Assembly: GCF_964204865.1 (NCBI RefSeq)
Contig: NC_135250.1
Coordinates: 25,358,001 to 25,422,000 of the forward strand
DNA: 64,000 nt
Source: Styela clava
Taxonomy: Eukaryota
Direction of reading: 5' to 3'
Shown here in pieces: positions 1 to 59,844 of this stretch. The notes below the pieces were generated by a model. The model saw only the letters and a list, made by a program, of their open reading frames with translations, was not told the DNA's origin and made no database searches. The position numbers and the translations under genes are program-made. The first letter of the stretch is position 1. Every line of letters begins with the position of its first letter.

Positions 1-3000
1 CTTGTGTTTGCTTAGTTGGCGCAGGAAGAGCTTGTTCGTAACCGGCAGTTTCTTGTAGCACGTTCGAATATGATGGTTGAGAAACTGGGTCGTTGGAAGG
101 AGTTGCTGATTAATTAAAAAAAGTTCGATTAACGACTATAGGAGAAATATTAAATATCTTTAAAATATTGACGAAGAATTGGCGAACAGTGCAAGACATA
201 TCCAAATCATTTCTTATTTTTCATTGTCGTCACTCAAGAGCGAATTACACAATAAGGAAGAGTAAACGTTTGTATAATGACTAAACGATACAAAAATGAC
301 TAGCAAAATATTTGTCATCTTTTAGTAATTTGAGATGAGAATGATACCGGAGAAGACATACATATTTTACTTAGGCAAATTATCTTATCTTCCTGTTTAA
401 ATATTTTTGCATTGGTGATGAAAGGAAAGCTGGTGAATGTCCTGTATTTACTTATATTTCAGAATTTTCCGGTGGCTGATCAATAATAATGTATTTTACG
501 TGAAATGGTGATTTTCGGATCTCACTACCTTTTTCTTGTATATTTTCGTAATTATGTTCTTTCGCTTCTGCATGTTTCTTTAACTTTTTTATCTTATTTA
601 TCAGTCTGTATATGATTAAGCCAAAGATTACGTAGAAGATCAAAGGAATCAAAAAACCGATCACAAAACTGACGATGTTCAACTCAAACGATTTCTTTTC
701 TGAAAAATTATATAAGCTAAAAAAAAAACTTAAATATTAGAAATTTTTTATATAATATTGAAAGTTTTAACAAAATTGACGAAATTGACAATATTTTCAT
801 TTTAAAACCGAATAGTTGCATGAACATTATTCCTTATTCAAAAGAATAATTTTCTAAACAATATATATTTCAGTAAATGATTCCCAAACTTTTTTCATTT
901 TTTTGAAGTAAAGTGTCTGCAAAAATCATAATTCACTTTCATAAAGTTTCGATTGGAATCTTATATAGTTCTCGGAACATACTTAGTATCTAATTACTAT
1001 TTCCCTTGAACTATTTCCTGAAACTTAATACTGATTCAGGTTTGAGCCGGGATCATACATCAATATAATACATACGGTTTTCTAATATCGGCCCATTAAT
1101 AACAAAAAGAAATTTAATATAAAGGTATTCTCGCAACAAGAACTGAAAATCAATTTCCGAAAAATATACAGTTTTATTTAGATAATGCGCTAACCACTGT
1201 CCATGAATTCCATAGGAGTGAGTGAATTCTCAATGATTACGCCCAATTGAGTAGAACAAATCTAAATACTTGGAAATATAATAATTGAATTCAATTTATA
1301 CCTTTTGGTTTTCCCACACAAGAACCTATGACAGACCAATAGCAATTGAATATTTTGATCGAAGCAGAATAATTACGATTTGGTTCTGGTTGAAATGAAT
1401 ACCCGGATGATGTCGTCACTTCTATGAGCTTTGTGGCTACCTCCGAGTTTGCATCTAGCGAAGAAACTGGAGTTGAAGTTAGATTCAGTTCCTATAAATA
1501 ATCAGATAAAAAAAATTGCATCAGAAATATTGAAGTTTTTATTTTAAATTTCCTAAATATTGGTGTCAAATAAATTGTTGAAGATAACGCAATAAACCAA
1601 AACTTCCAGATAAGTGGAATATGATTTTGATATAAAATATTGATAAAACAATATCTGTCATTTATATCAGTGGACCAAAACAGATCTACGATCGTGAGCA
1701 ATAGAGTGGATGGCTGTAGAATCAGCCAAACTTCGTGACACAGAGTGAAGTCATATTACACGTAATAATTCTCAATACAATTTATACACCATCAACCAAG
1801 TTGTTGTAGGACATGTGTCTCAAATAGTTTGTGTTAACAATGCAATTATCGACTCACCACGATATAAGAATCACCAGTCTCTGTTTTGTTATATAAGATC
1901 CATGAGATGACGCAAGTTTGCGTATTCTTGTATTGTATAATAGATGACGATTCAACAGATAACTTTGATCCGCCTGTTCTTGCGCTTCGGATGGTAGAAT
2001 ATTGGGTTGGACAGTTATCCTTTGTTACACATGCAGTTATCTGAAATTTATATTAACAATATAATAAAGCAACATAAAATTTGGGTGAGGGGGTCAAGTA
2101 GCTTAGAACGTTTCGTACGTATTCCTGAGAGAGGAGACTTTTTGCCGGAAGTAGAACCCATGCAATAAAAATTAAAAAGAACTGATCATTTACGGTATAA
2201 TGAAACATTTTTACTTACTTTGATTTGAAAGGTTGTGGTAGGCGACAAATTGGTTATTGTGGTTGACTGTTTCTCAGGTGTTGGTGAATCCAACCATTTT
2301 GTTGATTCACCTGAGGTCGGACTTACTTCTATTCTGTGAAACAGATGTGAGTTGACAGTGACAAATTGATGCGAGTAAAACACCTTGTAACAATACACGT
2401 AATGGTGTTGGGTAGACGGGTCGTGACCAACATGATAGATTTACATGTTGACACTCACCAATACGTCTAATAAATTTACCATGGTAACTTATACAGCTCC
2501 AACCGTTTTCTTAGATGACATTATATCATTGTTGTGAAAACGAATATTGACTTAGATTTGTCTAACGACATTTTCGGTTCGGAGGAAGAGATGACGCATA
2601 AACAAGATGTTGAAATTTATGCCTAAATATTCATAAAGGTAAACTCACTTGTGTGGAAATCCAACAGCATTTGTATGCGGTTGCCATGAGATGATCAAGT
2701 TAGAGTTGCAGACGTTATTTGATATTTGTTGAATTGTGGGATTTCCAGCCACTGAAAGTAATGACCAAAAGATTAGTTAACATAGATTACAAAATTAAAG
2801 AACGTTATTTATATTCACCCTCATATGATTCAGTTGTATTTTTCTCGGTTTTGCCAATTCGATAACGACAACTATAAGATCCCGCATCTGCAATATTTGC
2901 GTTTTGAAGATTCAATATTGCTGATCCATTTTGTAACAATTGATAAACTCTACTTGTAGTTGCGGTTGATACTTTGTTAGATGATTTGTACCAATCAACT

Positions 3001-5602
3001 TGTGTAACAGCGCTGCATTCTGTTGCAGAACACCTTTTCTGGTTTCCGTTGATGGTTTGTATTCTAACGAACGGGCCTGGAAATACTGAAGCAGAATGTG
3101 TGAAATTTGAAGCTGTAAATAACACAAATTGGTTTAGAATAAGAAAAACTAGGTTGATTACTTTGGTTCGTAGTTAGCGCAACTCTGTTTGTAACACAAT
3201 TTGAATTGAGTGATTGAAGCCCAATAATTCTATTATGAGCATTCAGTGGCACCGAAAAACAATACTTGTATCGTATACTTGTATATGTGATCTGTATTGA
3301 TCAGTTCCAATTGAATATTCTTAATTTGACAATCTATTTCAATTTATATTTAATTTACGATCAATATTTAAGTACTAGCTTATTGGACAGGAAGTTGATA
3401 TATTTGAGTTTTGCTGGGACAGTTACTGTAGTGTTCTGGGTACTATAGCATTTCAACAGTTCAAGCTTCCTTCTAATATCGTATGATTTTTGTGGAATTG
3501 TTGTTGAAAATTATGTTTGAACTTTGTGTGCATATATTTGAGTTTTGCTCCATTGTTTCTTTAGATAGAACCTATGCAACTTGTTACGTTTCCTTTACCT
3601 CCAGTTGCGCACGAATTGAGAAAAATCAATGAATATTACCTTTCTGGCAAATGTAGTAGATGATTTCATCACAAGATATATCAATCCACTCATACGTTTT
3701 TTTTCCAACTGCCAAACAATCTTCATTGCCAAAATTGTTTGGTTCATTCGAATACCTGATAAATTTAGAAGCCGAATTAATTATTCTAAAAATTATGCAG
3801 GCTCTAAGCAACTAATTTAAGAAATAGTTAGTGACAAGTTGTTACGCAGATATACCTTCTAAATATTTTCCGAACAGGAGAAGTATTGATATAATAAATA
3901 TGGAATTAAAATTTTAAATTTTAGCTAGGCATAAGTTATTCAATTGCCCCTAACAGGTATCTAGTGAGGTTTTTCGGGATTTCACCTCCGACAAAATGAA
4001 TTTGACTACGACGAATAATAAATGGCATTTTTGAAGTCATGCCGTGGTATTTCTCTTCACTATAATATTGATAATATGAATACCGCGTGGTATACAAGTT
4101 CTGAAAACTATTTCACGCAGAAAATATATTGTTTATTAAATTCTTTTGCAACTTTTATAAATAAAATTGAAAAACAAACCAGTTTTGATATCCCACTTCT
4201 CCTCTCATTATCACATTAGTACCATCCTGCCATTTCCAATCTTCTTCTATTGCTATGTCGTTTCCACCGATATAAAATGTGTTTACCATGTTTTGTAAGC
4301 TAATAATATAAAATTGTATCATGTTTTTTTAAAGAAAATAACGGAATCATCGATTAAAAATTGAAAAAACGACCGAAAGAAGAGCTGAAATAGACCACGT
4401 ACGCGCTATGATAACTAAAGAGCTTTTTTGTGATGAAGCAAAGTATAAATAAAAACGCTGATTATGCCAGGTAGCCAATAATCAAAAATACCTTTATTTG
4501 TTGAAGCAAAGTAGTATTAAAAAAGCGTTGATTATGCCAGGAAGTCCGCAATAAATAAATAAAATCAGTTAGTTCCGGTGTTTGTGTGATTTGCAAACTT
4601 GAATTGATTTGTTTAAAAACTAATTCCTAAAAAACCCATTCCGTAAAGAACAGTTTTTGCTTCAATTTATTCAAATATACAAACTTGTGAGCTATATAAA
4701 TTCTATTGATCCCTGCTTTTATTGTATTTACGATAGACTACTTGTTTCAATGCAACACATCCAAGGTAAATAAATCGCTATGTATATGTTAAAACTAAAA
4801 GGATTTCTGGATACATCAGGCTGGGATTGGTTATACGATATATTGTAAAAATAAAGAAGTACATAGTTGGGATTATTGCAGTACTACTATATGCTTTCTA
4901 AAAGAAACATAAAACCTTCAGCTCTTTTACATCACTGTACAGACAATATCCTATTTCAACTCACGCTTATAATAAGTGTTTAATCTACATCGAGATGGTA
5001 CAAACAACAGTGAGATAATCAATTCCGCTTATTTACTGCTAAAGTTTCATTCAATACATAGAAATATTCACATATTAAATAACACCAAGATATCAAAAAT
5101 AAGTTTCTTTTTAACTCACTCGAATGCTGAATTAATGACTGTCGTCATTCTCTCATTATCAACTTTAGCTAAGTAACCTCCCAATCTTTCACAGAATGTT
5201 TTTGCTTTTTCGTAAGTTTTACCTTGTTTGTAAAAAAGCAGTTCAAACCCATCAACACATTCTTTCTTCCAGGGATCTGAAACAAAACGGTATCTGGAAT
5301 TGTAATCAGATTCAAATTTGAACAATTGAATAAATAACAATTCTCATTTATTAACAGAAAATTTGACAAAAGATAAAATTTGAATGATAGATTGAATAAG
5401 TATACAATACTTTAAAAACTGAGATTTTTTAATTTACTACAAGGAAACTTTGTATTTGTCCGTGAGAACGCAACCTATTCATAAACAAAAGGTTTTCATC
5501 AAGATATGACCAAAAGTTTTTATTCATAAAATTCAACTAACCTTGAGCTGAAACACTGGTGATAAGGATCGAAAACAATATCACCAAAATTTTAAGATTC
5601 AT
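1..5602 (-). CDS. Receptor copy A: CTLD(EPN)-Ig-FN3-FN3-TM-Tyr-rich tail; 11 exons, last exon runs off the window start (>=529 aa)
   Basis: GT-AG exons in consistent phase: 5602-5542 (signal MNLKILVILFSILITSVSAQ); 5276-5120, 4299-4180, 3755-3640 (CTLD: AKTFCERLGGYLAKV, FYIGGND..WKWQDG, EPNNFGNEDC..WIDISC..YICQK); 3085-2819 (Ig: C..WYK..LNLQNANIADAGSYSC); 2751-2649, 2333-2219, 2040-1858, 1491-1302 (two FN3: ISWQP..NLSPTTTFQIKITA; ISW..PNRNYSASI); 699-529 (TM NIVSFVIGFLIPLIFYVIFGLII, then HNYENI); 105-<1 (SYSNVLQETAGYEQALP). No stop in the spliced frame. The Ig acceptor was chosen by paralog conservation; alternative in-phase AGs exist. Confidence 0.88.
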
Positions 5603-9215: not shown

Positions 9216-9304
9216 AGCAGTCATAACACGTATATTGTCACAATTTCGACATCTTCAGCAGATATTCCACTTTTACTATTATTGCTTAATTTATTTGTTT
9301 ACAG

Positions 9305-11252
9305 TTGCATATTTGTACTCGTTCACAAAAATTTGAAGACATCTGATGACGTACTTTCTTTGACTGACATGATAAAACTTAACGATAAAGTGGATGGAGA
9401 TGAATATATTGCTAAAGCAATATCTGTGAAAAGGTTAGAAGTATTTATTTTTTTTTTCAAGTATTCTACAAGGTTATTTGAGTTGATTATGTGATTTCAT
9501 GTAAATGATATTTGTCAAATTCAGGTGATGGATGTTATATATTGGGATATGAGATTTTGTTTGAACGTCATACCGAAATATATCATTGGAACTAAATGAA
9601 TTTGACTTTTCTATGCTACGCATATTTACGCCGTTCGCTTGAAAATCACATTTTTTGTCCGTGTGAACGCCATGCCATTGAATATTTTAGCATGAAGGGG
9701 AAGCGAATGAATATCACACTCGGTGAAGAATCGATGACAACATGTGATGTAATAAATATCGGAGAGTCAGGAATACAAAATGAACAATCTTCTGGAAAAG
9801 AAACTATATTAACGGGAAGAATTAGGAAACTAGATAAAGAGATCGTAATCTATACTTCTTCAAACACATGCTTTAATTGAAAGTTTTAGCATAAATGCAA
9901 TCAATACCTCTTAGTAGAGAAAAGATAAAGAAATTAAACATATTTTTTGACGCAAAATTAAATTTTTTACTTAATTCCTTCTTTAATATATAAATGTATA
10001 TAAGTATATTTTTTTAATTTATACTTTATCATTTTGTCATAATGTATAAGATAACTTATCTTGCTTCAGCATCTCAATCGTTTATTCGACGTCATCTGGC
10101 GACCAAATAATTTTCAAACAAAGTCCTTCAATCACTCTGAACAGCGCTGCTATAGATGATGAGGGTAAGGAAGACTATTCTATATTTCTGTGTAATAGAG
10201 AATTTTGGTCTAGGTCAATAGGTTGAGATAAAAAAAGAAGTGAGTTATCTCAGTGAGAATATAAGCCTAACCCGGTTTGGGTCCAACTCCAAGCAATGTT
10301 ACGAGAGAATACTTTTGAAAAATTTCCAGAAAAAGAAAACTTGACATGGAACATTGGCTCGAAGATGAAGTGTTATTTTATCGGAAGCACTTTTACTATC
10401 TTTTCGGATTTTTAAATATTGATCATGTGACTATTTTTAATGATTATGATTTTTTTCAATTTTATTAGTATTTTTGAAACCAAAGCTCTTCAAAATCATC
10501 TGGAATTAATGGTAATATTTTTTTTTAGAAAAACATTCATTCGAGTTCAACATCGCGAGTTTCGTGATCGGTTTTCTTATTCCTTTTGTCTTCTTGGTCG
10601 TCTCTGCCGGGATCATATACAAATTGAGGAAGAAAATAAAGAATCTGGAGAAAGATGCTGGAGAAAGAAGCAAATAAACACAATTACGAAACTATAAAAG
10701 GAAAAGGTACTTAGAATTAATGTTAATCAGAAAAGCATTATTCTTGTAGAAAATATTGTTCCTATATAACCAACTAGTTTTATGAATATTCAAAAAAATA
10801 TTAATAATTACTCATATTGTAAACACAACAGAATATGTTCGGGATCAAATTTGTATCTCCAATTTATTTATTATTACATAGAATGAATCTTAGTAAGATT
10901 TAAAAGTTTAGTAAGTTATTGATGTACAAATATTATAACCCGGCGATTTGCAATTTCAAAAAACCCCAAGAAAATTTGCATAATAAAACAAATGTAAATG
11001 TATTTCTGAGAGACATGTTCATCTTGAATTACTGAAATTTAAAATGGATTGGTCTAATATTAGCCCATTACACCAATATTATAAATCTTATTGGAATTTT
11101 TATTTAATTTGATTCTCAAGCAATTAGCAAATCCTTCCAACAACCAGTTGTATCCGAATGTACTGCAAGAAACTACCGAAAACAAACAAGCTTATTCTGC
11201 CACAACTATCCAAAGACATGGGGAATCAGCTTACGAAACTTACAACGCCTAA
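9305..11252 (+). pseudogene. 5'-truncated receptor fragment E (three of the four membrane-proximal-domain exons, TM exon, tail exon)
   Basis: Exons 9305-9433 (CIFVLVHKN..YIAKAI), 9691-~9845 (NITLGEESMTTC; normal donor deleted), 10070-10164, 10529-10706 (TM, +7 nt frameshift from a TGGAGAAAGA duplication) and 11128-11252 (LYPNV..AYETYNA*). The ten upstream exons are absent. Confidence 0.85.
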
Positions 11253-11591
11253 TAAACTCAATATCTATTCGCATATTATAAAAAGAAAAAAAGGTTGGTC
11301 TTCATAAAACACTCGGTGATGTTGTGACTAACAATGTCTTAGCTGTTGGTTAGAATATTTCAATCGTGATGGTGTCAATGGATAAAATTCTTACAAGTCG
11401 ACTCAATTATCAATCTCCATCCAATTTCTCTGAAGCTGATATGAATATACTAATATCATACGGCATGTATTCTCATTTTCAATTATGAAGAAAATTGACT
11501 TAAAATTAGCCACGTAGTAATTCGATGATATGCCCAAAATGCCCATCTTCCGTCGGCCAGGGTTTTTCTATTGATATGGATGTCTTAATCT

Positions 11592-11810
11592 GGTGCTCTC
11601 GAAATTTGCGTACCAAGATGGCGTACACCGGAACGTAGTATGTGTACCGCATGTGTAATTTTATTCCAATTTTCCATATTTTAGTTCTATTACGAGTTCG
11701 AGGACTAGCCAAGTGACTACCGTAGTATTTGTATCTGAAATTAAGGCTTAACCCTAACCTGGTACATATACTACGTTCCGGTGACCGCCATCTTGGTTCA
11801 CATACTTCCC
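11592..11810. mobile_element. Palindromic MITE with long imperfect TIRs (family also at 59845-60056; related ends at 39395-39602 and 51838-52225)
   Basis: GTACCAAGATGGCG..CACCGGAACGTAGTATGTGTACC ... GGTACATATACTACGTTCCGGTG..CGCCATCTTGGTTC inverted pair. Confidence 0.7.
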
Positions 11811-12239
11811 TTAATCTTACAAAACGTCACTAGACATTTTCAAATCACTTGATTATTTAAGTGAGTATTTAGCGAAACCACGTGATACCTATTTTTATTG
11901 TTCATTGCATATTCACTCGTCTTTGTTATTTCGTTTTTATTTTATTTTATTTTTTATTATATCTGAGGGTGTTGTTAGCTCCATAGCTAAACAATCCGTC
12001 ATTCTCAACTCATAATATTTAAACATTTATCGTAACAACTTCGTCAATTCGTGATTTTTTGTTTAATAGATCCATTAATTCTGATTCTTAATATGAAAAA
12101 TCATCATTCAATTCTGAACCTTCGCTGACGCTGCAAATATCCCTATTATGTAAATCATTCTCGTACTTTTACTGGAAAAAGCAAATGTGACTTATTACGT
12201 TGATGTTATTTCCTTGGCTTATTACTTTAACTTATTATG

Positions 12240-12407
12240 CAGAGTGTCCATAAAGTCCCTTTACAATTTCAATTTTTGTTATGAAGCCAGTTTATATCTT
12301 AAGTATTTTTACTTCATTTAATACATCTGTGAGGGCCAAAATAAAGTGGGGCATCGGTAAATTTCCTCTTGCAATTTTAAAAATGTCAAGACCTTATGGA
12401 CACCCTA
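12240..12407. mobile_element. Small Tc1/mariner-like MITE (also 60521-60688)
   Basis: TIRs CAGAGTGTCCATAAAGTC / GACCTTATGGACACCCTA, followed by TA. Confidence 0.6.
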
Positions 12408-12429
12408 TATAATGAGTCAAAAATCAAAG

Positions 12430-13197
12430 GAATTTTCAAAGCTCACAAGTTTAAATATTTAAACAAATATATAGCCTACTTGTACAAAAACTGTTTTATA
12501 CATAATTGATTTTATAGTAATTATTAGCTATTATCAGTTAACCTGCCTGCGGATTATACTAGCAATATTCTTTATAGGCTATCTGGTTTTATCAACATTT
12601 TTTAATAGTACTTTGCTTTATCACGCAAAGGCTATTATGTTATTTTAATACGTCTATAGTCTCAACTTTTTAGTCAGTACTCTTCACGATGTACACTAAG
12701 GCTCTGGTCTTTACTTCAAAATAAAAAAAATGATAAGGTTTATATATTCTAAGCATATATATAAGGTGATGAAAACACCATTCATATTAGTGAAACGACC
12801 TAGCTAGAGAGGGACATTGGAAATGGCAGGATGGTACTGATGTGATAATGATAGGTGAAGTTGAATATTAATATATACCAACCAACCAAATTATTCTCTA
12901 AAAAGTCAAAGTATATACATACTGCATTTCTAAAAATGAGGTAGATTTTAGCTTAAGATAGTTCATCCAATTGGTGACTAGTACTTAACAAGTAATCCAA
13001 AAGAAGGAATTCCCCTACGACAGACAATGGCATTATTGAAGTCTCGCTTGCCGTTGAATTTGCTACACTCTTGTGGATACTACACGACATGAAAGTTATA
13101 AAAAATAATTTAAGGAGCAATTTTTTTTTTTTTCAATTTTTTTAAATATAGTTGAGGACCAAATCAGTTTTGATATCTTACTTCACCTCTCATCATT
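12430..13197. pseudogene. Decayed receptor intron-2/CTLD exon-3 remnant, with an inverted piece of the exon end at ~13157-13197 (duplicated at ~61270-62020)
   Basis: + strand TGGAAATGGCAGGATGGTACTGATGTGATAATG (WKWQDGTDVIM) with frameshifts; - strand ATGAGAGGTGAAGTAAGATATCAAAACTG (MRGEVRYQN). Confidence 0.7.
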
Positions 13198-35274: not shown

Positions 35275-35533
35275 CGAGGGCGGGCATGGTTTTTAGACTA
35301 TGGCCCAAAAATTTTCGGCCATCTAGACTGGCGGGCCATGTGAGTGTGACGTAAAAAGTAACATTTTATGATAATATATACAGTGTTACATTAGCAAATG
35401 TGGAAAAAAAAGGTCTCATGATCTATTTTTTAGCTAAAACCTCAAAGGTTTAGTTTGGGTGTGGCAGCATCAGGCAGGCCAGATTGACTTACCCAGCGGG
35501 TCGGATTTGGTCCGCGGGCCGTAGTTTGCCGTA
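35275..35533. mobile_element. Degenerate hAT-type MITE
   Basis: GCGGGCC blocks and a GGTCCGCGGGCCGTAGTTTGCC end, related to 26281. Confidence 0.4.
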
Positions 35534-35580
35534 TAGGATGACTGCCCAAAAACCTTTCATTTCCCCTTTATACTTTAGAT

Positions 35581-44800: not shown

Positions 44801-47057
44801 CGCTCTTTATGTTGCGGGACACTACAATAATTACTATAAAAATGGCCACAGATTTTGATACATTGTTAAGCTACTCGTATGCTTGGTGAAAAGGGGTGAG
44901 ATATGACAAAATCTTGCAATCAACGCCTGAGTATTCATAAATATAGACTCACTTATGTGGGAATCCAACAGCATTTTTATGTGGTTGCCATGAGATGATC
45001 AAGTTAGAGTTACAGATTTTATTTGATATTTCATAAATTGTGGGTTTTCCATTCACTGCAAAGTAAATAAAACAATAATGTTAACGAACGGGTACTGATA
45101 GATGAGCTTATATTTATTTAATTACCTTCATATGATACTGTTTTACTTTTCCAAGTTTGGCCAATTCGAAAACGGCAACTATACGATCCCGCGTCTGCAA
45201 TATTTGCGTTTTGAAGATTCAATGTTGCTGAACCTGTTTGTATCGTTTGATAAACTATACTTGTATTTTCATTCGATACTTTGTTGGATGCTTTATGCCA
45301 TTCAACTTGTGTTGCAGTGCTGCAGTTTGTTGCAGAGCACATTTTTTGATTGCCGTTGTTAGTTTGTATTTCAACAAGAGATCCTCCGAATTCTGATGCA
45401 GAACGTTTAAAATTTGTCATAAATGAGACAAATTGATTTATGGAAGGCTTGTTTATTTTCATTGCTTCCTGTTAGCGGGTACGCTGTACATTAGAACCAT
45501 CTTAAGTATTTTCATACCAATCAGAATTGATGAATTTTTAATGAGTTTATTAAAAAAAATAGAAAAGGCCATGACAAGTCCTAATAATTATCTTTTTTCT
45601 TTTGTCGTTTTTAATTTTATTTATTTTCTTCTATTGCTATAATAGGCAGTCAGTGACACCAACTTCCGTATATTAAGTCGAACGAATAAAAATCTCAAAG
45701 TTACCTTTTTGACAAATGTAGTAAAAGTTTCCATCACAAGATACATCAACCCACTGGTACCACTCTCTGCCAACTGATAAACAGTCTTCATCGCCGAGAC
45801 TGTGGCTCCCGCCGTTGGGTTGATTACCTCTCCTGTAATATTTAAAATCACGACTACTCACTTTATGAAGAGAAAAACAATAATACAATCGTTTCCGAAT
45901 TGTCTATGTTTTCAAATTTTTGTAAATAAAAGTAAGAAACAAACCAGTTTTGGTATCCTACTTCTCCTCTCATTATCACATCAGAACCATCCTGCCATTT
46001 CCAATCTCCCTCGTTAGCTCTGTCATTTCCACCGATATAAAACGTGTTTTCTTCAAATTTTATTCTAGGAATATATATTTCTAATTTGTTTTATAAAGGC
46101 TTGCTTTAGAGAACTTCGACAGAAGAATTTAAATGCCCCCTTATTCGCTAAAACCTATGTTTCACAGTCCATAAGCAGAAAAGACGTTTTGAATAGTACG
46201 TGCCCAATTCTTCAGTTGCAGTGCTGAAAGTCCATTCGATCAGAGACTTAACCAGGGGGTGATTTTGGGAGTCGGACCCCCATTTGAAATGTAAAAAATA
46301 AAGAAAAAAACAATTTTTTTGTGTCAAACATAGCAGCTTGAAACACTTGTTAGACCCCCAAGACCCATGAAAACACACGTTTCCTGTCGGACCAGCCATT
46401 GGTATGTTATAAAGAGGAAATTCGAAATTTCAGACCCTACCCCATCAAATTCCTGGCTACGCCCCTGCATTCAATTGTAATTCATATTATAAATAGCTTC
46501 GACATAACAAAAATATTTTTTATCAACTCACGGGAATGCTGAATTAATGACTGTCGTTATTCTCTCATTATCAACTTTCGCCAAGTAACCTGCCAATCCT
46601 TCACATGAAGATTTTGCCTTGTTGTAGGTTTTACGTTGTTTGAAGAAAAGAAGTTCAAACCCATCAACACACTCTTTCTTCCAAGGATCTTAGTACGAAA
46701 TATTTGTCATTTATATATATCTTTTTTAATATTTAGCAAAATTTATTATAACACAACTATTTGTTTATTAACATTTTTTAATAGGTTGAGAGTAATGGCC
46801 TCATTAATTTTAAAAACTGATCAAATATATTGTGTTCCTCATGCAAAAGAAAATTGTTACAATGAAAACATATATCTTAGTGATAGTGTTGACAAAACAA
46901 AATTATACTTTTTCCAACTATACAAATCCTATTCCTAAACAAATTGTGTGAACAAGACATAAACAAATGTTTTAGTTACAATACCTAACTTACCTTGACC
47001 TGAAACACTTTTACTGATAATCAAAGCAATAATCGCAGAAACCAACCTAAAGTTCAT
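41864..47057 (-). CDS. Receptor copy C: CTLD(QPN, longer loop)-Ig-FN3-FN3-TM-tail with one repeat unit; 11 exons, 544 aa
   Basis: Exons 47057-46994, 46688-46532, 46064-45945, 45832-45705, 45392-45126, 45055-44953, 44487-44373, 44006-43824, 43456-43267, 42644-42474, 42000-41864. All GT-AG; 1635 nt; ends ..PYSNVLQETTCYEEALPATTKQAQMETAYETYNA*. Confidence 0.9.
46241..46467. mobile_element. hAT-type MITE in intron 2 of copy C
   Basis: Ends CAGAGACTTAACCAGG / CCTGGCTACGCCCCTG; TSD CATTCGAT / CATTCAAT. Confidence 0.7.
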
Positions 47058-49300: not shown

Positions 49301-49989
49301 TTAGTAAGCTGATTCCCCTTGTGTTTAGGTAGCTTTGGTAGAACAAGCTTCTTCGTTTCCTGTAGTTTTTTGCATCACATTCGAATATAATGGGTTGTTG
49401 GAAGGAGTTGCTAATTGGTTGAAAAACAAATTTAAACAATTCCAATTAGATTTAATATATTGGTGTAATGGACTAATATCGAACCAATCCTATTTTAAAT
49501 TTTAGTAATTTAAGATGGACATGTCTCTCAGATGGGCATTCACATTTATTTCATTATGAAAATTTTCTTGGGGCTTTTCAAATTTGCAAATCTCCGTGTC
49601 CTTATATTTATACATCAATAACCTACTAAACTTTTTAAATCTCACTAAAGTTCATTTCATGGTATTATAAATAAATTGAAGATACAAATTTGATTGCGAC
49701 CATATGTTGTTGTAATTACAATATGAATATTTATTTATTTTCTTGAGTAGTCATAAAACTATTTGGTTATATAGGAACAATATTTTATCCAGGGAATAAT
49801 GCTTTTCTGAAAAACAATTATTCTAAGTACCTTTTTCTTTTATAGTCTCGTGATTGTGTTTTTTTGCTTCCACATATTTTTCTTGATTATTTATTTTATT
49901 CATCAATTTGTATATGATCCAGGCAGGGACTAGCAGAAAGATCAAAGGAATAAGAAAACCGATCACGAAACTGATGACGTTGACTTTTT
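49301..49989 (-). pseudogene. Orphan TM + tail fragment F of the receptor family
   Basis: TM exon 49989-49831 is open (NVISFVIGFLIPLIFLLVPAWII..HNHETI). Tail exon 49410-49301 has a premature TAA. No ectodomain exons upstream. Confidence 0.82.
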
Positions 49990-53570: not shown

Positions 53571-55655
53571 ATGAACTATAGGTTGATTTCGGCAATATTT
53601 TCCTTGATCATCAGTACAAGTATTTCAGCTCAAGGTAAGTAAATAATCATAACTAAAACATTTATTTGTGCATAGTTTATACAATCTGATTAGGAATAGG
53701 ATTTGCATTGTTCGGAAAAATACAATTTTGTTTTGTCCACACTATCACTAAAAGTTTTCTTTTGAAAGAATGAACACAATATATATATTTGATCAATTTT
53801 CAAAGTGAATGAAGACATTACTCTCAACCTGTTAAAATTTAAATGTTAACCCATTATTTCCCGCCAATCTGAGCCAATTTTGACACCCCTTATTGACAAA
53901 TAGTTTTGTGATTATAATAACTTTTCGCCCAATATTAAAAAATGATAACAGTGACAAATAATTCGTCTTAAGATGCCTGGAAAAACGAATGTGTTGATGG
54001 GTTAGAACTGCTTTTCTTCAAACAGCGTAGAACTTACATGGATGCAAAATCTTCCTGTGAAGGAATGGGAAGTTACTTGGCTAAAGTTGATACTGAAAGA
54101 ATGACGGCAGTCATTAATTCAACATTCGGGTGAGCAAGGAAAAATCCACTTTTTTATTATGGGTTATTTCTTATTCAGTATACATAATGAAAAATGTGCA
54201 GTTAAGGCGAAAGGTGCCAGCGTAGCTACTTTTTTAACATTTTAAGATCTTGCATCAAGATTCATAGTATTATTTATATGATATTCTGGACAGTTTTGCA
54301 ATTTCAAATAATTTAAGTACTTCAATTACCTGACAAAAATTTCAGCGTTTACAAAATTTGCAATATTCGAAAAACTTGCAACTTTCGAAAAATTGCAGGT
54401 TGTCTTAAATTATTTTTTACATGCATTAAATTCTTATAACAAGAGAGCAGTACTTAAATATATGGACACATGAGGAAAAAAATGGGAAATGGATCATATC
54501 TTTTACCGGTAATATTGTTTTCCCAACTACGGTTGACCACCGCAACGCAACGGTCGTAAACGTGGACCCGCCATGAGATGATCAGACAAAAAATTATAGT
54601 AAAAAATTAATCACATGATGTCCACTGCAACCTTCGAAATAAATAAAAGTAATAAATAGAGACAACAGCCATATTCAAAAAACTAATTTCAAAGTATTTG
54701 GTAAAGGAGTTGGGGAGAAAAGCAACTTTTTCACAGCTAGAAAAAAATAAAGGATACTAAAAACAACATCTTAACAACATAACATAAGAGAACTTCAAAA
54801 TATTCCAATTATTTTTCGAATGAATTCAATTTTCATAAAATTCACACTCATCATAACTTTTTGTTACTAAATTGTGGTATTTTCTCCTTATTATATACTA
54901 AATAACATATAAAATATATTTTGGTCTTAGCGAGTCAGTGGTTGCCTCCTTCTCAATTTAAATTGAGGAGCATAATCCTGTCTTTACATTGAAAAAACTA
55001 TTTATATATTCTTAGCATACAAAAGAAGGAAAACTCTTTTTATATTGGTGGGAACGACGTAGCTAACAAGGGAGATTGGAAATGGCAAGATGGTATTGAT
55101 GTGATCATGAGAGGAGAAGCAGGATATCAAAACTGGTTTGTTTGTTACTATGCCCTCAAAAATTGGAAGAAATTAGGGTGTTATATTCGCAGCGTAAATT
55201 ATTCTCCAAAGCTCATAGGCGTGTAGTTTTTATTATCATTTGTGTCAGTAACTTGTTGTAAGTCGTAGACACAAGCAATTGAGTAACTATGCCGAGCTAA
55301 AACATATTGTAATCTTCTCATACTCAGTATCTGCATCGTTACCTGTTAAGTGAATAACTATTCACCAATTACATTTGATTGAAATTTATACGAAGCACTC
55401 GATCTAAAGAATATTGTTTAAATTGTTTTTTTTTTCGAACTAGCTTGATTTTTAGATTTAATAATCGCGACTTCTGAATTTACCAGGAAATGGATTCAAC
55501 CAAACGGCGAGACATCAGCTAACAAAGCTGTTGAAGACTGTTTGTCAGTTGGAAGAGAAACGTACCAGTGGGTTGATGTATCTTGTAATGGAAAATTATA
55601 CTACATTTGCCAGAAAGTTAAGAATAATTTTTCATGTTCGTTCCAGCTCAATTAA
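53571..55655 (+). CDS. Possible secreted single-domain C-type lectin (169 aa) from copy D by read-through of the dead exon-4 donor
   Basis: Four intact exons (64+157+120+169 nt = 510 nt): signal peptide plus complete CTLD ending ..YICQKVKNNFSCSFQLN*. Confidence 0.45.
54438..54790 (+). mobile_element. AACAAGAGAGC..ATATATGGACAC family element (degenerate) in intron 2 of copy D
   Basis: 5' AACAAGAGAGCAGTACTTAAATATATGGACAC and an (AAC)-rich 3' part; the end is approximate. Confidence 0.5.
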
Positions 55656-58600
55656 GCGAAGATACTCATTAAATCGTCGTGAGGTGATACTCAATGGTAA
55701 ATCTCTTAGAACAAATCCTAATCTTTTGTGATTTGTTCTCTTACTGGTATTTTCTACGATTTACGATGATAGGTCGGTCTTCGGGCTTATAGTTTTTAGT
55801 TCATCGCAGATTGCATCAAAAGAAGTAGACCGGTAGACCTGGTTGCTAGTAAAATATAAATATATGCAAATAGGCAACTGTGTAGGAATATATATCAAGG
55901 CAGGTAGTCATTTTAGGAGTATTCTAGAAAGGAAGGAGGAATGTAACTGACTAAGACTTTATTCTACTATTTTATATCCAATTCCAAGGCCCTTCCACTG
56001 AAATACTAAGCATCAACGAAAACCCGAGAATGTGTACACCAACAAACTGCAGCACAGCGACACAAATTGAACGGTACAAATCATCTAACAAAGTATCAAC
56101 CGCAACTACAAGTAAAGTTTATCAAACGATACAAAATGGATCAGCAACATTGAATCTTCAAAACGCAAATATTGCAGATGCGGGATCCTATAGTTGTCGT
56201 TTTCTAATTGGCAAAACCGAGAAAAATACAACTGAAACATATGGAGGTGAATGTAAATAACGATATCTGCCTAATTTTTAATCTCTTTCCTGTTTGCGCT
56301 AATTTTTTGGTATTTGATTTTCCAGTGGCTGGTAATCCCACAATTCATCAAATATCCAATAACGTCTGCAACTCTAACTTGATCATCTCATGGCAACCAC
56401 ATACAAATGCTGTTGGATTTCCGCACAAGTGAGATTATTTTTATGAATATTTAGGCATAATTTACAAAATCTTGTTTATGTGTCATCTTTTACTTTAAAC
56501 GAGCCTGTCTATTCAAGCCGCTTTGTAGCATGTCATAATATGACAATGCTGAAGCGTCAAGTGTCAAATTTTTTCAAGTATATCAATGTCAACTTGGACT
56601 TGAGTATCAATGATGAGTTTATAATGATTTATATTGTTCAACGGTTCTGTTTTTTGTAGAATTGAAGTAAGTCCGACCTCAGGGGGATCAACAAGATGGG
56701 TGGATTCACCAACATCTGAGAAACAGTCAACTACAATAACCAGTTTGTCGCCCACCACAACTTATCAAATCAAAGTAAGCAATAATGTTTCAATATTGTA
56801 AAGTGTAAACAGCCAGTTATTTTTTTCATTAGTTCGTGAGCTCTAATTAGAGCAGAAGATATTCTCTTTTCGGAATACGTTCAACATGCTCTCACTGACG
56901 ACTGTGTCCAACTTATATGGTGCTTTACTATAAAGTAAATATAATATTTTGTCAGATAACTGCATGTGTGGCAAAATATAAGTGTCCGAATAAATATTCT
57001 GCCAACCAAAGCGCAACAACAAGGGCAGGAGCAACCGTATATGCAGAATCGTCGTCTATTATACAGTACAAAAATACGCAAACTTGCGTCATCTCCTGGA
57101 TCTTTTCTAACAAGTCCGAGACTGGTGATTCATATATCGTGGTAAGTGAATATTTGCACTGTTGATACAAATTATTCAAATCGCTTTCACAACTTGGTGG
57201 ACGATGTATACATTGAACTTGCTGATTAGCCGCGTAATACGAAGTGAACAAAGGGTCATGAAGTTCACCTGATCACACCTTCATCCATTTTTCGTTACTC
57301 ACAATCGTAAATATGAATTAGCCCGATATACTGGCATATAGTGTTCAATAATACTTTATATTTGTATTCGAATCCGAAGTTTTGGTTTACGATACCTAAC
57401 ATTCTTATTTGTCATCAATTTTTGACGGCATTTATAGATCAAACATTTAGCAATCGAAACAATATTTTGAGTATTTCTCATGCAAATGTTTAACTGTTGA
57501 TTTATAGGAACTTAATCTAACCTCATCCCTGGCTTAATCACGAGATTCAAACTTGATGACAGACATAAAACAAATAAACGTGACGTCATCATCAATATTC
57601 CGTTTCGATAAAAATATTCGATTGTGCTGGATTTGATCAAACTGTAAGAGTTACTGGTACTTGTCTAGGAAATCCTTCAGGTATATGATTAAAGTTAAAT
57701 ATTAATAATTCATCTTAAGCATGTTTGTCACAACGCATTTGAGAAAACATTGTCTTATATTTTAGCTCCTGCAAAAGTTTTTCCGCCTGAAATTTTTGAA
57801 GATGTTCTAATCAGCGTATGTGGAATCAAGAAATTCGGAATACAAGCACCAGATGAGACCAATGGTCTTGTCAGGTAAGCTAGATGGAACAGAGTAGAAA
57901 ATGCTATAAAGGTAATTATTTATTAAACAATTAAGTACGTCAGTCTTTTTATAAACGACAGTAAAAAATAGGTTCATATTTTATTATGTATCAAAATATT
58001 GCGCATCTCTTCTACCAATATAATCACTCTGCTTAATAGACACCAAATTTCAGATTCATTCTGATTATTATATTGTCACAATTTCGACATCTTCAGCAGA
58101 TATTCCACTTTTCCTATTATTGCTTAATTTATTTGTTTACAGTTGCATATTTGTACTCGTTCACAAAACTTTGAAGACATCTGATGACGTACTTTTTATG
58201 ACTGACATGATAAAACTTAACAATACAGTGGATAGAGATGAATATATTGCTAAAGCAATATCTGTGAAAAGGTTAAAAGTATTTTTTTTTTCGAATTCTA
58301 CATAGTTATTTGAGTTGACTATGTGATTTCATGTAAATGATATTTGTCCAATTGAGGTGATGGATGTTATATATTATGATATGAGATTTTGTTTAAAGGT
58401 CATACCGGAATATATCATCGGAACTAAATGAATTTGTCTCTTTTATGCTACGCATATTTACGCCGTTCGCTTGAAAATCACATTTTTATCCGTGTGAACT
58501 GCTATGCGTTATTAATAATCAATGCTTACAATATTTTGAATAGCATCGGTAATTCTGTATAACAGATCATTGTGTAATCGCCATTGAATATTTTAGCGAG

Positions 58601-59844
58601 CGAATGAATATTACACTCGGTAAAGAATCAATGACAACGTGTGATGTAATAAAGACTGGAGAGTCAGGAATACAAAAGGAACAATCTCCTGAATAAGAAA
58701 TTATATTTACGGGAAGAAATAAGAAACTAGATAAAGAGATATTCAGGTAGATATTTATAATCTATACTTCATCCAACACATGCTTCAATTGAAAGTTTTA
58801 GCATAAATACAATCAATACCTCTTAGTAAAGAAAAGATAAAGAAAGTAAAGATATTTCTTGACGCAAAATTAAATTTTTTACTTAATTTCTTTTTCAATA
58901 TATAAATGTACATAAGTATATATTCTTTAATATATACTTTATCATTTTGTCATATTGTATAAGATAACCTATCTTGCTTCAGCATCTCAATCGTTTATTC
59001 GACCCCATCTGGCGACCAAATATTTTTCAAACAAAGTCCTTAAATTATTCTGAACAGCGCTGCTATAGACGATGAGGGTAAGGAAGACTTTTCTATATTT
59101 CAGCCAAGTGTAATAGATAATTTTGGTCTAGGTCAATAGGTTGAGATAAAAAAAAGTTAGCTGGATCAGGTCATAAAAAAATATTGAGAATGTAAGCTGA
59201 ACGCGGTTTAGGTCAAAATATTGCGAGGGAATAGTTCTGAGAATTTTCCAGGAAAAGATAACTTGGCAAAACATTGGCTTGAAGATCAAGCGTTATTTTA
59301 TCGAAAGCATCTTTCGCTATTTTTGATGTTTTGGAAATAAAGATCATGCGATTATCTTTGAAGATTGTGATTTTTGTCCATTTTATCAATATTTATTGAA
59401 CCAAAAGCCCTTTAAGATCATTTGGAATTATTAGTAATATGGAATTATGAGGAAGATGTTAAAGCAAAAGAACACAATTACGAGACAATAAAAGAAAAAG
59501 GTACTTAGAATTAATGTTGATCAGAAAAGCATTATTCCCTGGATAAAATATTGTTCCTATATAACCAAATAGTTTTATGAGTATTCAAAAAACACATAAT
59601 AATTACTCATTTTTATCGCGATGGTGTCAATGGATTAAAATTCTTACACGTCGACTCAATTATTAATCTCCATCCACTTTCTCTGAAGCTGATATGAATA
59701 TACTAATACCATACGGCATGTGTTCTCATTTTCAATTAGGAAGAAACTTGACTCAAAGATAGCCACGTAGTAATTCGATGATATGTTCAAAATGCCCATC
59801 TTTCGTCGGCCATGGTTTTTCTCCTGATATAGATGTCTTAATCT

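What the first reader, a model, noticed from the sequence alone, without database searches (positions are those of the whole stretch)
1..59500. Candidate undescribed diversified immune-receptor cluster: CTLD-Ig-FN3 type-I receptors with tyrosine-repeat tails
Seen: at least 4 full-span paralogs (A, B, C intact; D broken), 2 truncated fragments and several exon remnants in 60 kb, in both orientations. All share one exon/phase plan joining a C-type lectin, an Ig domain, FN3 domains, an uncharged TM (SF[V/M]IGFLIP) and a Tyr-rich non-catalytic tail. Known: vertebrate lectin receptors (NK complex) are mostly type-II, and Ig-type inhibitory/activating receptors (KIR/LILR, Siglec) lack CTLDs; I do not recognise this combined architecture as a named family. 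Inference: birth-and-death turnover, ligand-loop variation and signalling-tail variation are hallmarks of innate immune or allorecognition receptor complexes. A relationship to Botryllus fester co-receptor (FcoR) Ig-family genes is possible but not established here.
Basis: partly seen in the sequence, partly recalled or inferred. Interest (0 to 1): 0.92.

Follow-up and report, generated by a model that had tools for sequence, protein, structure and literature searches.

The report
Lectin-headed receptors paired with phosphatase twins
This stretch of the sea squirt Styela clava genome holds four of about fifty copies of an unnamed, fast-duplicating cell-surface receptor gene (lectin head, tyrosine-rich tail); sister genes elsewhere on the chromosome carry the same head on a tyrosine phosphatase, but what the family does is untested.

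Summary
The window (Styela clava, chromosome-scale contig C1, 25.358-25.422 Mb) holds three intact genes (A, B, C). It also holds one multiply broken copy (D), two TM+tail fragments and several exon remnants.

All share one exon and phase plan: signal peptide, C-type lectin domain (3 exons), Ig, FN3, FN3, an optional four-exon membrane-proximal FN3-like domain, an uncharged TM, and a disordered tail with conserved tyrosine motifs.

- The family is unnamed. RefSeq calls the models 'uncharacterized protein' and I found no paper on it.
- It is much larger than the window: at least 45 Ig-exon and 50 TM-exon matches, mostly on C1 at 24.8-26.5 Mb.
- Searches found it only in S. clava.

The new point is that these genes are phosphatase-less relatives of lectin-headed receptor tyrosine phosphatases (RPTPs) encoded about 0.9 Mb away. 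PTP-type and tail-type genes share their 5' exons (second lectin exon to first FN3; dS about 0.14-0.36). Their membrane-proximal exons are anciently diverged (dS at least 1.2). This matches the known pattern of paired receptors kept similar by exon-scale exchange.

An immune role, expression and polymorphism remain untested. The Botryllus FcoR link is not supported. Exon-wide dN/dS is below 1. The scan had noted the same family on neighbouring DNA.

The parts
1..5602 (-). Copy A, short form, intact. Exons: SP 5543-5602, CTLD 5119-5277 / 4179-4298 / 3641-3754, Ig 2820-3086, FN3-1 2648-2752 + 2228-2332, FN3-2 1858-2049 + 1303-1491, TM 524-700, tail 1-106 (continues 220 nt beyond the window start; 3 repeat units).
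   Evidence: It is 94-100% identical per exon to database model P0132. Copy A is the only window copy with EPN in the lectin loop.
16305..25202 (-). Copy B, long form, intact. Exons: SP 25143-25202, CTLD 24762-24920 / 22879-22998 / 22219-22332, Ig 21158-21424, FN3-1 20980-21084 + 20310-20414, FN3-2 19938-20129 + 19370-19573, membrane-proximal domain 19122-19226 / 18707-18832 / 17905-18063 / 17547-17654, TM 17128-17298, tail 16305-16631 (3 units of 32 aa).
   Evidence: It matches RefSeq XP_077968785 (P0127, LOC120335142), at 100% in most exons (90-98% in the remaining HSPs).
22386..22463 (-). Remnant of a long-loop-class CTLD exon 3 (QPNGET...VEDC type, ends in a stop), 54 nt upstream of the exon 3 that copy B uses, which is of the GGT-GENC class.
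   Evidence: This is a physical footprint of exon-scale replacement.
41864..47057 (-). Copy C, short form, intact. Exons: SP about 46993-47057, CTLD 46534-46689 / 45944-46063 / 45706-45831, Ig 45127-45390, FN3-1 44952-45056 + 44382-44486, FN3-2 43824-44009 + 43268-43453, TM 42475-42645, tail 41864-41998 (1 unit).
53571..59499 (+). Copy D, long form, pseudogene. SP 53571-53634 and CTLD exons 53972-54127 / 55017-55136 / 55497-55616 are open, but the exon-3 donor is GT->TT. There are stops in X2 (57508-57685), M3 (58598-58744) and M4 (58984-59088). Only the cytoplasmic end of the TM exon is left (59437-59499), and the tail exon is deleted.
9231..11217 (+). Fragment E: the 3' part of a long-form copy. 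It has a membrane-proximal exon at 9303-9437, TM at 10516-10659 and tail at 11113-11217, and no 5' exons. It lies inside the segmental duplication 9231-15295, which matches 58069-64000.
49318..49987 (-). Fragment F: a TM exon plus a tail exon, with stop codons in the tail.
12794..12868 (+). CTLD exon-2 remnant. Its duplicate lies at 61624-61695(+).
61624..61695 (+). CTLD exon-2 remnant, the duplicate of 12794-12868.

Best explanation
The window is part of a Styela clava gene family of roughly 50 or more members. The genes encode type-I membrane glycoproteins built as signal peptide, C-type lectin domain, Ig, FN3, FN3, an optional RPTP-type juxtamembrane FN3-like domain, an uncharged TM helix and a disordered multi-tyrosine tail.

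Shown:
- The family descends from, and still coexists with, lectin-headed receptor tyrosine phosphatases on the same chromosome.
- In the window genes, the phosphatase TM and the tandem PTP domains are replaced by a different TM exon and a terminal tail exon.
- The 5' exons compared (second and third lectin exons, Ig, first FN3) are shared between PTP-type and tail-type genes at the same divergence as among the tail genes. The membrane-proximal exons of the two types are anciently diverged. The two classes therefore form paired receptors with matched heads, kept matched by exon-scale exchange.

Inferred mechanism:
- The lectin head, with the Ig FG loop, binds a glycan or glycoprotein ligand.
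- Clustering lets Src-type kinases phosphorylate the conserved tail tyrosines (NYE[TN]I, Y[SE]N[VEL]L, GYxQ[PA]LP, AYEQP repeats, terminal AYE[ST]YN).
- The phosphorylated tail then recruits SH2 adaptors.
- A PTP-alpha-like paralog with the same head, engaging the same ligand, supplies the opposing or priming phosphatase activity.

The most likely biological role is recognition of non-self or altered self (innate immunity or allorecognition). That step is inference only.
For: Architecture: tail pLDDT below 35; folded domains 70-85; top Foldseek hits are the RPTP delta, mu and sigma ectodomains.

Family size and range: 45 Ig-exon matches; 50 TM-exon matches; a divergent subfamily at C1:24.85-25.10 Mb with the same plan.

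PTP paralogs: P0007/P0125 have the same ectodomain plus tandem Y_phosphatase domains (414-492 bits). These are closest to PTPRA and PTPRE. P0125 maps to locus L018. D1 keeps the WPD loop and the HCSAGxGRTG active-site motif.

Mosaic ancestry:
- dS between PTP-type and tail-type genes is 0.14-0.36 from CTLD exon 2 to FN3-1, against 0.16-0.25 among tail genes.
- It is about 0.83-0.86 in X1+X2, against 0.36.
- It is at least 1.24 in the membrane-proximal exons, against 0.34.
- The C-half tree splits the two types at 100/100 support across a branch of 0.51. The N-half tree is star-like and the PTP genes are not monophyletic in the best tree.
- Amino-acid identity runs 75-84% down to 39-41% along the ectodomain.
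- The three lectin-loop classes are shared by PTP-type and tail-type genes.
- Copy B carries an exon-3 remnant of another loop class.
- A second PTP/tail pair in the divergent subfamily (P0139/P0140) is 72-90% identical.

Constraint: dN/dS is 0.26-0.70 in all exons and 0.32 in the disordered tail. The tail tyrosine motifs are kept between subfamilies whose ectodomains are only 26-67% identical by domain.

The membrane-proximal domain resembles Fn3_PTPRU, the fourth Dep-1 Fn3 and PTP_tm (score 0.89 with 176-181 shared features).
Against: Splicing rests on RefSeq models that I could not check against reads.

The tail has no canonical ITAM and only a sporadic ITIM-like motif. YxxI/V motifs could equally be endocytic signals. 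The tail has no recognisable relative; the atlas search scored about 0.8, which is chance level.

The lectin site lacks the Asn of the WND motif in every copy (W[VILT]D), and most copies have QPN rather than EPN or QPD. Sugar binding is therefore uncertain.

In the N-half tree the AU test does not reject PTP monophyly (p = 0.39). The number and direction of exchanges is unresolved.

Introns are not alignable beyond 10-70 bp flanks. The exchange mechanism, gene conversion or an old chimeric origin, is therefore not shown.

Confidence: 0.6

Rival explanations
1. These are endocytic or scavenger lectin receptors. The head captures glycosylated particles, and the YxxI/V motifs in the tail (YETI, YSNV) act as AP-2 sorting signals for uptake rather than as phosphotyrosine docking sites. 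On this reading the similarity to the RPTP paralogs is only historical.
For: The lectin domain's nearest solved relatives are the mannose receptor, Endo180 and DEC-205, all type-I endocytic receptors (E 1e-15 to 1e-10). The juxtamembrane NYE[TN]I and YSNV motifs fit the YxxPhi pattern. One RefSeq fragment of the family is auto-named 'macrophage mannose receptor 1-like'.
Against: The repeated GYEQALP / AYEQP units and the C-terminal AYE[ST]YN are not YxxPhi motifs, yet they are conserved under purifying selection. The continued sharing of heads with active-looking tandem-PTP paralogs is easier to explain by a phosphotyrosine circuit.
Confidence: 0.17
2. These are non-immune recognition molecules, used for cell adhesion, larval settlement or metamorphosis cue sensing, or gamete self/non-self recognition. 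They diversify for reasons unrelated to pathogens.
For: Ig-FN3 strings and RPTP ectodomains are classical adhesion and guidance modules. The S. clava genome paper reports that expanded lectin and complement genes peak at metamorphosis (PMC7540406). No immune-specific motif is present.
Against: Family size, pseudogenes and fragments, the discrete loop classes, a hypervariable patch (dN/dS 1.35, chosen post hoc) and restriction to one species in the databases are all more typical of recognition families under conflict. Nothing here actually excludes this reading.
Confidence: 0.15
3. These are signalling-dead decoys. The tail-type proteins only compete with the lectin-headed RPTPs for ligand, or form heterodimers with them. 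The tail has no signalling role.
For: The heads are shared with RPTP paralogs. There is no ITAM and no charged TM residue.
Against: The tail is a predicted disordered region, yet it evolves at dN/dS 0.32. It keeps four or more tyrosine motifs across deeply diverged subfamilies and varies by whole 32-aa units. That pattern indicates functional linear motifs.
Confidence: 0.06
4. The cluster is mostly decaying duplicates produced by segmental duplication, with no specific function.
For: Copy D, fragments E and F and the exon remnants are dead. The window holds large, recent segmental duplications.
Against: Three of the four window copies, and most of the 23 other loci, have open exons and intact splice sites. 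dN/dS is below 1 in every exon.
Confidence: 0.02

Closest known systems
Paired receptor families of vertebrate immunity (KIR, Ly49, LILR, SIRP, PILR, Siglec-5/14)
   Same: They are clustered, show birth-and-death turnover with pseudogenes and fragments, and have closely related ligand-binding domains on partners with different signalling parts. The binding domain is kept similar between partners while the rest diverges.
   Different: The domain make-up is different (CTLD-Ig-FN3...). No partner has a charged TM residue or an ITAM adaptor. The counter-partner carries its own tandem phosphatase instead of an ITIM that recruits one. Opposite signalling outputs are not shown.
Receptor-type protein tyrosine phosphatases: R2A/R2B ectodomains (LAR, PTP delta/sigma, PTP mu) and the R4 catalytic module (PTP alpha/epsilon)
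   Same: The family has an Ig-FN3 string and a juxtamembrane FN3-like domain. Some members have a furin-like RRKR/RKKR site in that domain. The catalytic paralogs have D1-D2 domains closest to PTPRA and PTPRE.
   Different: The window genes have no PTP domain at all and use a different TM. The N-terminal C-type lectin head matches none of the solved vertebrate RPTP ectodomains that came up here. That no vertebrate RPTP has a lectin head is from my own knowledge.
Mannose receptor family CTLDs (MRC1, MRC2/Endo180, DEC-205)
   Same: They are type-I membrane proteins, and they are the best sequence matches to the lectin domain among solved structures.
   Different: The family has a single CTLD instead of 8 to 10, and no ricin or FNII domains. 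It has Ig and FN3 domains and a different tail.
Botryllus schlosseri fester co-receptors (FcoR)
   Same: They are tunicate, clustered, diversified type-I receptors with tyrosine motifs in the tail (PMC12582321).
   Different: FcoR is Ig-Sushi-Ig-Ig with canonical ITIM or hemITAM motifs. It has no CTLD or FN3. No sequence link was found in any search.
NK-complex C-type lectin-like receptors
   Same: They have a CTLD head and form a clustered multigene family.
   Different: They are type-II proteins without Ig or FN3 domains. The family here is type-I, with an N-terminal signal peptide.

Membership tests
C-type lectin-like domain superfamily (Pfam PF00059) | A profile match over the curated cut-off that covers the whole domain | tested here: met
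   P0127 (copy B) scores 65.8 bits and P0132 64.0 bits against a cut-off of 22.6, over profile positions 2-107. The three window exons cover profile positions 2-34, 37-71 and 68-107.
Canonical Ca2+-dependent sugar-binding C-type lectins | An EPN or QPD triplet, the downstream Glu, and the WND motif, which together form Ca2+ site 2 | tested here: not met
   EPN occurs only in copy A and its twin. Nearly all others have QPN (one has LPN). The Glu before the Cys is kept in all but one copy (L019 has Lys). WND is W[VILT]D in all 20 copies aligned, so the Asn ligand is lost. Sugar binding is neither shown nor excluded.
Receptor-type protein tyrosine phosphatase | An intracellular PTP catalytic domain | tested here: not met
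   No PTP exon is found in the window or in the 23 related loci. The final exon of each intact window gene ends in a stop codon. Paralogs P0007, P0125, P0146 and P0147 do have the domain.
Receptor-type protein tyrosine phosphatase | An RPTP-type ectodomain chassis: an Ig/FN3 string with a juxtamembrane FN3-like domain | tested here: inconclusive
   The top Foldseek hits are RPTP ectodomains, but TM-scores are low for the whole chain. The atlas lead to Fn3_PTPRU, Dep-1 and PTP_tm scores 0.89, below the 0.9 level. Direct homology to the S. clava RPTP ectodomain is certain.
ITAM/ITIM immunoreceptors | An ITAM (YxxL/I x6-12 YxxL/I), or a charged TM residue for an ITAM adaptor | tested here: not met
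   There are no ITAM matches in 15 tails. The TM has no charged residue.
ITAM/ITIM immunoreceptors | An ITIM ([SILV]xYxx[ILV]) in the cytoplasmic tail | tested here: inconclusive
   Only an SAYEQL variant of the repeat fits, and only in some copies, including A. Most copies have SAYEQP instead.
Botryllus FcoR family | An Ig-Sushi-Ig-Ig ectodomain | tested here: not met
   Pfam finds CTLD, one Ig and FN3, and no Sushi domain. The FcoR plan is taken from PMC12582321.
Paired receptors (functional class) | Clustered genes with near-identical ligand-binding domains but different signalling parts | tested here: met
Paired receptors (functional class) | Opposite signalling outputs on the same ligand | not testable with these tools
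   This needs ligand identification and cell assays.
NK-complex type-II C-type lectin receptors | Type-II orientation, with an N-terminal cytoplasmic tail and a C-terminal CTLD | tested here: not met
   The genes have an N-terminal signal-peptide exon, the CTLD comes first and the TM lies near the C-terminus.

The most novel reading that the evidence does not exclude
This is a germline-encoded recognition system, in a close invertebrate relative of vertebrates, in which the two arms of a paired receptor are a receptor tyrosine phosphatase and a phosphotyrosine-tail receptor. The two arms carry the same diversified lectin-Ig head. The heads are kept matched by exon exchange across a locus of about 1.7 Mb and 50 or more genes. 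The system is used for immune or allogeneic discrimination. It would be an independent solution to activating/inhibitory receptor pairing, with the phosphatase built into the receptor.
Probability: 0.25. Interest if true: 0.85.

Novelty: new variant of a known kind. Interest (0 to 1): 0.62.

Why it matters
Tunicates are the sister group of vertebrates, and how they achieve specific recognition without antigen receptors is an open question. Here a large, fast-turning-over receptor family can be read directly from the genome.

Its ligand-binding head sits on two alternative signalling parts: a tandem phosphatase, or a conserved multi-tyrosine tail. The 5' exons of the two kinds have a far more recent common history than their 3' exons.

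This is the logic of vertebrate paired receptors built from other parts, and it gives concrete experiments:
- matched PTP/tail pairs to co-localise;
- three lectin-loop classes to put on glycan arrays;
- defined phosphopeptides for SH2 pull-downs.

If the family proves to be a non-immune adhesion or uptake system, it is still a clear case of an RPTP ectodomain recruited to a new cytoplasmic module and then amplified. It would also add to the known large lectin expansions in Styela.

Tried and rejected
- Spliced models. I sent no self-joined spliced model to any search tool. Exons went in by window reference, and full-length queries were database protein ids only (P0005, P0125, P0127, P0138 and others). 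Exon alignments were concatenated only inside local scripts, for dN/dS and trees.
- Genome fetch. The copies at C1:25.23-25.30 Mb and on C2, C3, C4 and C18 were therefore not analysed.
- Positive selection. Exon-wide dN/dS is 0.26-0.70. Only a 6-codon patch, picked post hoc, reaches 1.35, and I treat that as a lead.
- Intron comparison between PTP-type and tail-type genes was uninformative. Similarity stops 10-70 bp into the introns, as it also does between diverged tail genes.
- Relatives of the tail. The atlas search on the TM+tail gave MUC1, syndecan and SCIMP-like rows at about 0.8, which is chance level.
- Other species. All three protein searches and the Ig-exon profile search over 1.84 billion representatives returned family members from S. 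clava only. This is limited by how few stolidobranch proteomes are in the collections.
- Literature. Searches by LOC ids and by lectin, phosphatase and ascidian terms found nothing on this family.
- FcoR kinship was rejected on architecture.
- I ran no complex-prediction job, because I claim no specific binding pair.
Full report
WHAT IS THERE

The window is AT-rich eukaryotic DNA (31-37% G+C) with no N runs. A self-comparison and tblastn with the exon peptides of the first copy show four full-span paralogs:
- A at 1-5602 (-)
- B at 16305-25202 (-)
- C at 41864-47057 (-)
- D at 53571-59499 (+)

There are also several partial copies:
- two TM+tail fragments, E at 9231-11217 (+) and F at 49318-49987 (-);
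- lectin exon-2 remnants at 12794-12868 and 61624-61695;
- a lectin exon-3 remnant at 22386-22463.

The region 9231-15295 is a 92-94% identical copy of 58069-64000.

Searched exon by exon by window reference, Pfam finds the following:
- a C-type lectin domain split over three exons, covering profile positions 2-34, 37-71 and 68-107;
- one Ig exon (Ig_3, I-set);
- a weak fn3 match.

DATABASE MODELS AND ORGANISM

A profile of the four Ig exons was searched against 1.84 billion representative proteins. It pulled out five proteins with a single Ig match at residues 130-360 (about 150-240 in four of them). All are Styela clava RefSeq models named 'uncharacterized protein'.

Contig C1 of the window's genome is 32,746,820 bases long. 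That is the same length as the record carrying these RefSeq genes.

P0127 (XP_077968785, LOC120335142, 777 aa) matches copy B, at 100% in most exons and 90-98% in the remaining HSPs. P0132 (603 aa) matches copy A and its near-identical twin at C1:25.52 Mb. So the window is S. clava, C1:25,358,001-25,422,000.

I used these database models for all whole-protein work. 

ARCHITECTURE

On the spliced models Lectin_C scores 64-66 bits (cut-off 22.6), I-set about 22-24 bits and fn3 18-23 bits.

The splice junctions of A, B and C are canonical and sit in the same phases:
- SP|CTLD1 phase 1; CTLD1|2 phase 2; CTLD2|3 phase 2; CTLD3|Ig phase 1;
- Ig|FN3 phase 1; phase 2 within FN3-1; two phase-0 junctions;
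- phase 1 into the TM exon and phase 1 into the tail exon.

An AlphaFold2 model of copy B's protein, built with 14 paralogs, has folded domains at pLDDT about 70-85. It shows a beta-rich fifth domain at residues 464-599, a TM helix, and a tail at pLDDT below 35. The best Foldseek matches are the RPTP delta, mu and sigma ectodomains.

The fifth domain is encoded by four exons. It is present in B and D and absent from A and C, giving long and short forms. Its nearest atlas look-alikes are Fn3_PTPRU, the fourth Dep-1 Fn3 and PTP_tm. The score is 0.89 with 176-181 shared features, which is a lead rather than proof.

STATE OF THE COPIES

A, B and C are open throughout. A's tail exon runs 220 nt beyond the window start.

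D has several lesions and is a pseudogene, not a clean conversion to a secreted lectin:
- its lectin exon-3 donor is changed from GT to TT;
- it has stop codons in X2, M3 and M4;
- it has lost the hydrophobic part of the TM exon;
- it has lost the tail exon.

FAMILY SIZE

In the whole genome the Ig exon has 45 matches and the TM exon 50. About 26 Ig exons lie between C1:25.23 and 25.64 Mb. Others lie at 26.31-26.47 Mb and on C2, C3, C4 and C18.

A more divergent subfamily with the same plan and the same TM exon sits at C1:24.85-25.10 Mb.

Near-identical pairs show very recent duplication. These pairs are A/L004, L014/L015, L008/L011, L005/L007 and L021/L022. One of the duplicated units is a two-gene block copied 163 kb away.

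THE PHOSPHATASE CONNECTION

P0007/P0125 (LOC120335088) has the same ectodomain followed by a different TM and two PTP domains (Y_phosphatase 414-492 bits).
- The catalytic module is closest to PTP alpha and epsilon, then to LAR/PTP sigma and CD45.
- D1 keeps the WPD loop and the HCSAGxGRTG motif.
- P0125 maps to locus L018 at C1:26.31 Mb.
- Two more such genes, L012 and L013, lie beside it. PTP exons follow each on the minus strand.

The window itself, and all 23 fetched loci, contain no PTP exon. In the genome scan, no PTP exon on C1 was listed between 25.17 and 26.29 Mb. That scan scored only the best 150 of 319 candidates.

MOSAIC HISTORY

I extracted the homologous exons from 27 loci and computed Nei-Gojobori distances.

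| Segment | dS, PTP-type vs tail-type | dS among tail-type genes (median) |
|---|---|---|
| CTLD exon 2 to FN3-1 | 0.14-0.36 (medians, by segment and PTP gene) | 0.16-0.25 |
| X1+X2 | about 0.83-0.86 | 0.36 |
| Membrane-proximal exons | at least 1.24 (often saturated) | 0.34 |

Maximum-likelihood trees agree. In the 3' half the three PTP genes are split from all 20 tail genes with 100/100 support across a branch of 0.51 substitutions per site. In the 5' half the tree is star-like. Path lengths from PTP genes to tail genes are about 0.2. L018 and L012/L013 fall in different places, although an AU test does not reject their monophyly (p = 0.39).

At the protein level the same gradient appears:

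| Pair | Identity along the ectodomain |
|---|---|
| PTP-type vs copy B | CTLD 75-81%, Ig 70-84%, FN3-1 73-76%, X1 59%, X2 58-59%, membrane-proximal 39-41% |
| tail vs tail | 78-87% throughout |
| PTP vs PTP | 66-79% in the 5' half, 77-88% in the 3' half |

Further support comes from three observations:
- The lectin long loop comes in three discrete classes: QPN-NVGNEDC, QPNGGT-GENC and QPNGET..N.AVEDC. The first and third classes occur in both PTP-type and tail-type genes.
- Copy B carries a dead remnant of a long-loop exon 3, 54 nt upstream of the different-class exon it uses.
- In the divergent subfamily, a PTP-type model (P0139) and a tail-type model (P0140) are 72-90% identical over the whole shared ectodomain.

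Together these show that the ligand-binding exons are exchanged between the two signalling classes, and also among tail genes. For example, B groups with L019 in the 5' half but with L008 and L011 in the 3' half.

The mechanism is not resolved. It could be short-tract conversion, or older recombination followed by intron turnover. Introns are not alignable beyond 10-70 bp of flank.

SELECTION AND VARIATION

Pooled dN/dS per exon is 0.26-0.70, which indicates purifying or relaxed selection rather than exon-wide diversifying selection.

The lectin exons 2 and 3 have the highest dS (0.39-0.46), while the FN3-1 exons have the lowest (0.15-0.20). The striking amino-acid differences in the lectin loop therefore reflect old exon lineages that have been retained and shuffled.

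Column entropy peaks at three places:
- a six-residue patch at the start of lectin exon 2, where pooled dN/dS is 1.35 against 0.20 in the adjacent framework (a post-hoc choice on few codons);
- the exon-3 loop;
- the Ig FG loop.

THE LECTIN SITE

Compared with canonical C-type lectins (knowledge of the family: the EPN or QPD triplet, a Glu, and the WND motif form Ca2+ site 2), copy A has EPN and nearly all others have QPN. The Glu is kept in all but one copy. WND is W[VILT]D in all 20 aligned copies.

The nearest solved relatives are CTLDs of the mannose receptor family. Sugar binding is plausible but not established.

THE TAIL

The TM (NI[IV]SF[VM]IGFLIP...) is uncharged. The cytoplasmic part keeps the following motifs:
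- a juxtamembrane NYE[TN]I;
- then Y[SE]N[VEL]L;
- one to three 32-residue units, each with GYxQ[AP]LP and SAYEQ[PL];
- a terminal AYE[ST]YN.

A and B have three units and C has one.

These tyrosines are conserved between subfamilies whose ectodomains are only 26-67% identical by domain. The tail evolves at dN/dS 0.32 although it is predicted to be disordered.

There is no ITAM. An ITIM-like SxYxxL occurs only where the repeat reads SAYEQL, in copy A and some others.

By general knowledge of SH2 specificities, YE[TN]I resembles the Src-family SH2 optimum, YxN is the Grb2 class and YxxP is the Crk/Abl class. The YxxI/V motifs also fit AP-2 sorting signals. This is inference. The tail has no detectable relative.

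INTERPRETATION

Shown: the window holds part of a large, apparently S. clava-restricted family that derives from lectin-headed RPTPs. In this family the phosphatase and its TM are replaced by a new TM and tyrosine-tail module. PTP-type and tail-type genes keep exchanging the exons that encode the binding head.

Inferred: the two classes act as paired receptors on a common ligand. The tail class is phosphorylated and recruits SH2 adaptors, and the PTP class supplies a PTP-alpha-like activity.

Speculative: the system serves immune or allogeneic recognition.

Rivals, with my odds:
- endocytic lectin receptors, 0.17;
- non-immune adhesion or settlement receptors, 0.15;
- signalling-dead decoys, 0.06;
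- decaying duplicates, 0.02.

COMPARISON WITH WHAT IS KNOWN

The family is not FcoR, which is Ig-Sushi-Ig-Ig (PMC12582321). It is not an NK-complex receptor, which is type II. It is not a collectin. The window genes are not RPTPs either, because they lack the catalytic domain.

It works most like vertebrate paired receptors, with the difference that the counter-arm is itself a phosphatase.

The S. clava genome paper reports collectin/MBL and ficolin expansions. It mentions neither this family nor phosphatases (PMC7540406). From memory, not checked here, an early PCR survey found unusually many PTP domains in Styela plicata. That fits the more than 150 PTP-exon matches in this genome.

Earlier notes of this scan had flagged the same receptor family 61 kb and 993 kb beyond the window, and lectin-tipped RPTPs elsewhere in the genome. 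I verified those points independently through RefSeq models and genome searches.

LIMITS

- There are no expression, polymorphism or ligand data.
- Only 27 of about 50 copies were analysed.
- Species restriction depends on sparse tunicate sampling in the protein collections.

VERDICT

Novelty: a new variant of a known kind (paired, clustered recognition receptors) with an undescribed domain plan and an RPTP partner.

Noticed in passing
window 29326-31596 (-): A collectin-like gene sits between copies B and C. One exon has a signal peptide plus a G-X-Y collagen stretch (Pfam Collagen, E 3.9e-4). A coiled-coil-like exon lies at 30489-30755, and a C-type lectin exon at 29326-29568 (Lectin_C, E 8.7e-4). 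This fits the collectin/MBL expansion reported for S. clava (PMC7540406).
   Followed up: partly
window 36925-37968 (-): Two long ORFs (201 and 110 aa) with several hydrophobic segments have no Pfam match. An earlier first-reader note calls this an LRRC8/pannexin-type channel gene. Nothing I ran supports or refutes that.
   Followed up: partly
window 9231-15295 and 58069-64000: This is a segmental duplication of about 6 kb at 92-94% identity. It carries the 3' end of a long-form receptor copy and a lectin exon-2 remnant. The copy downstream of D has lost the TM helix and the tail exon, which the other copy (fragment E) keeps.
   Followed up: yes
window 26171-26449 and 35484-35822 (both strands): A repeated element has overlapping ORFs on both strands encoding similar Pro/Ala/Gly/Arg-rich peptides (the ...PAGR...RPAG... 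type). It is probably a transposable-element or satellite-like repeat.
   Followed up: no
G000 C1:25348364-25358363 (L015) + copy A, versus C1:25511157-25528104 (L014, L004): A two-gene block (one long-form gene plus copy A) is duplicated 163 kb away. The sequences are almost identical, with tree branch lengths of 0-0.005.
   Followed up: partly
G000, whole genome: There are more than 150 PTP-domain exon matches, and only 150 of 319 candidates were scored. Dense clusters lie on C2 (10.87-11.45 Mb), C3 (17.95-18.24 Mb), C10, C6 and C1 (24.80-25.17 and 26.29-26.37 Mb). The receptor tyrosine phosphatase repertoire is therefore greatly expanded. At least one further type (P0105/P0141, with EGF, Ig, two CTLDs, FN3 and tandem PTP) shares the FN3-FN3-juxtamembrane chassis.
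   Followed up: partly
proteins P0005 and P0007 (membrane-proximal domain): Furin-like basic sites (RRKR-S, RKKR-S) are present in the juxtamembrane domain of the PTP-type protein and of one tail-type protein. The site is absent from copy B's domain. This recalls the furin processing of LAR-type and PTP-mu-type RPTPs, which I cite from knowledge and did not test.
   Followed up: no
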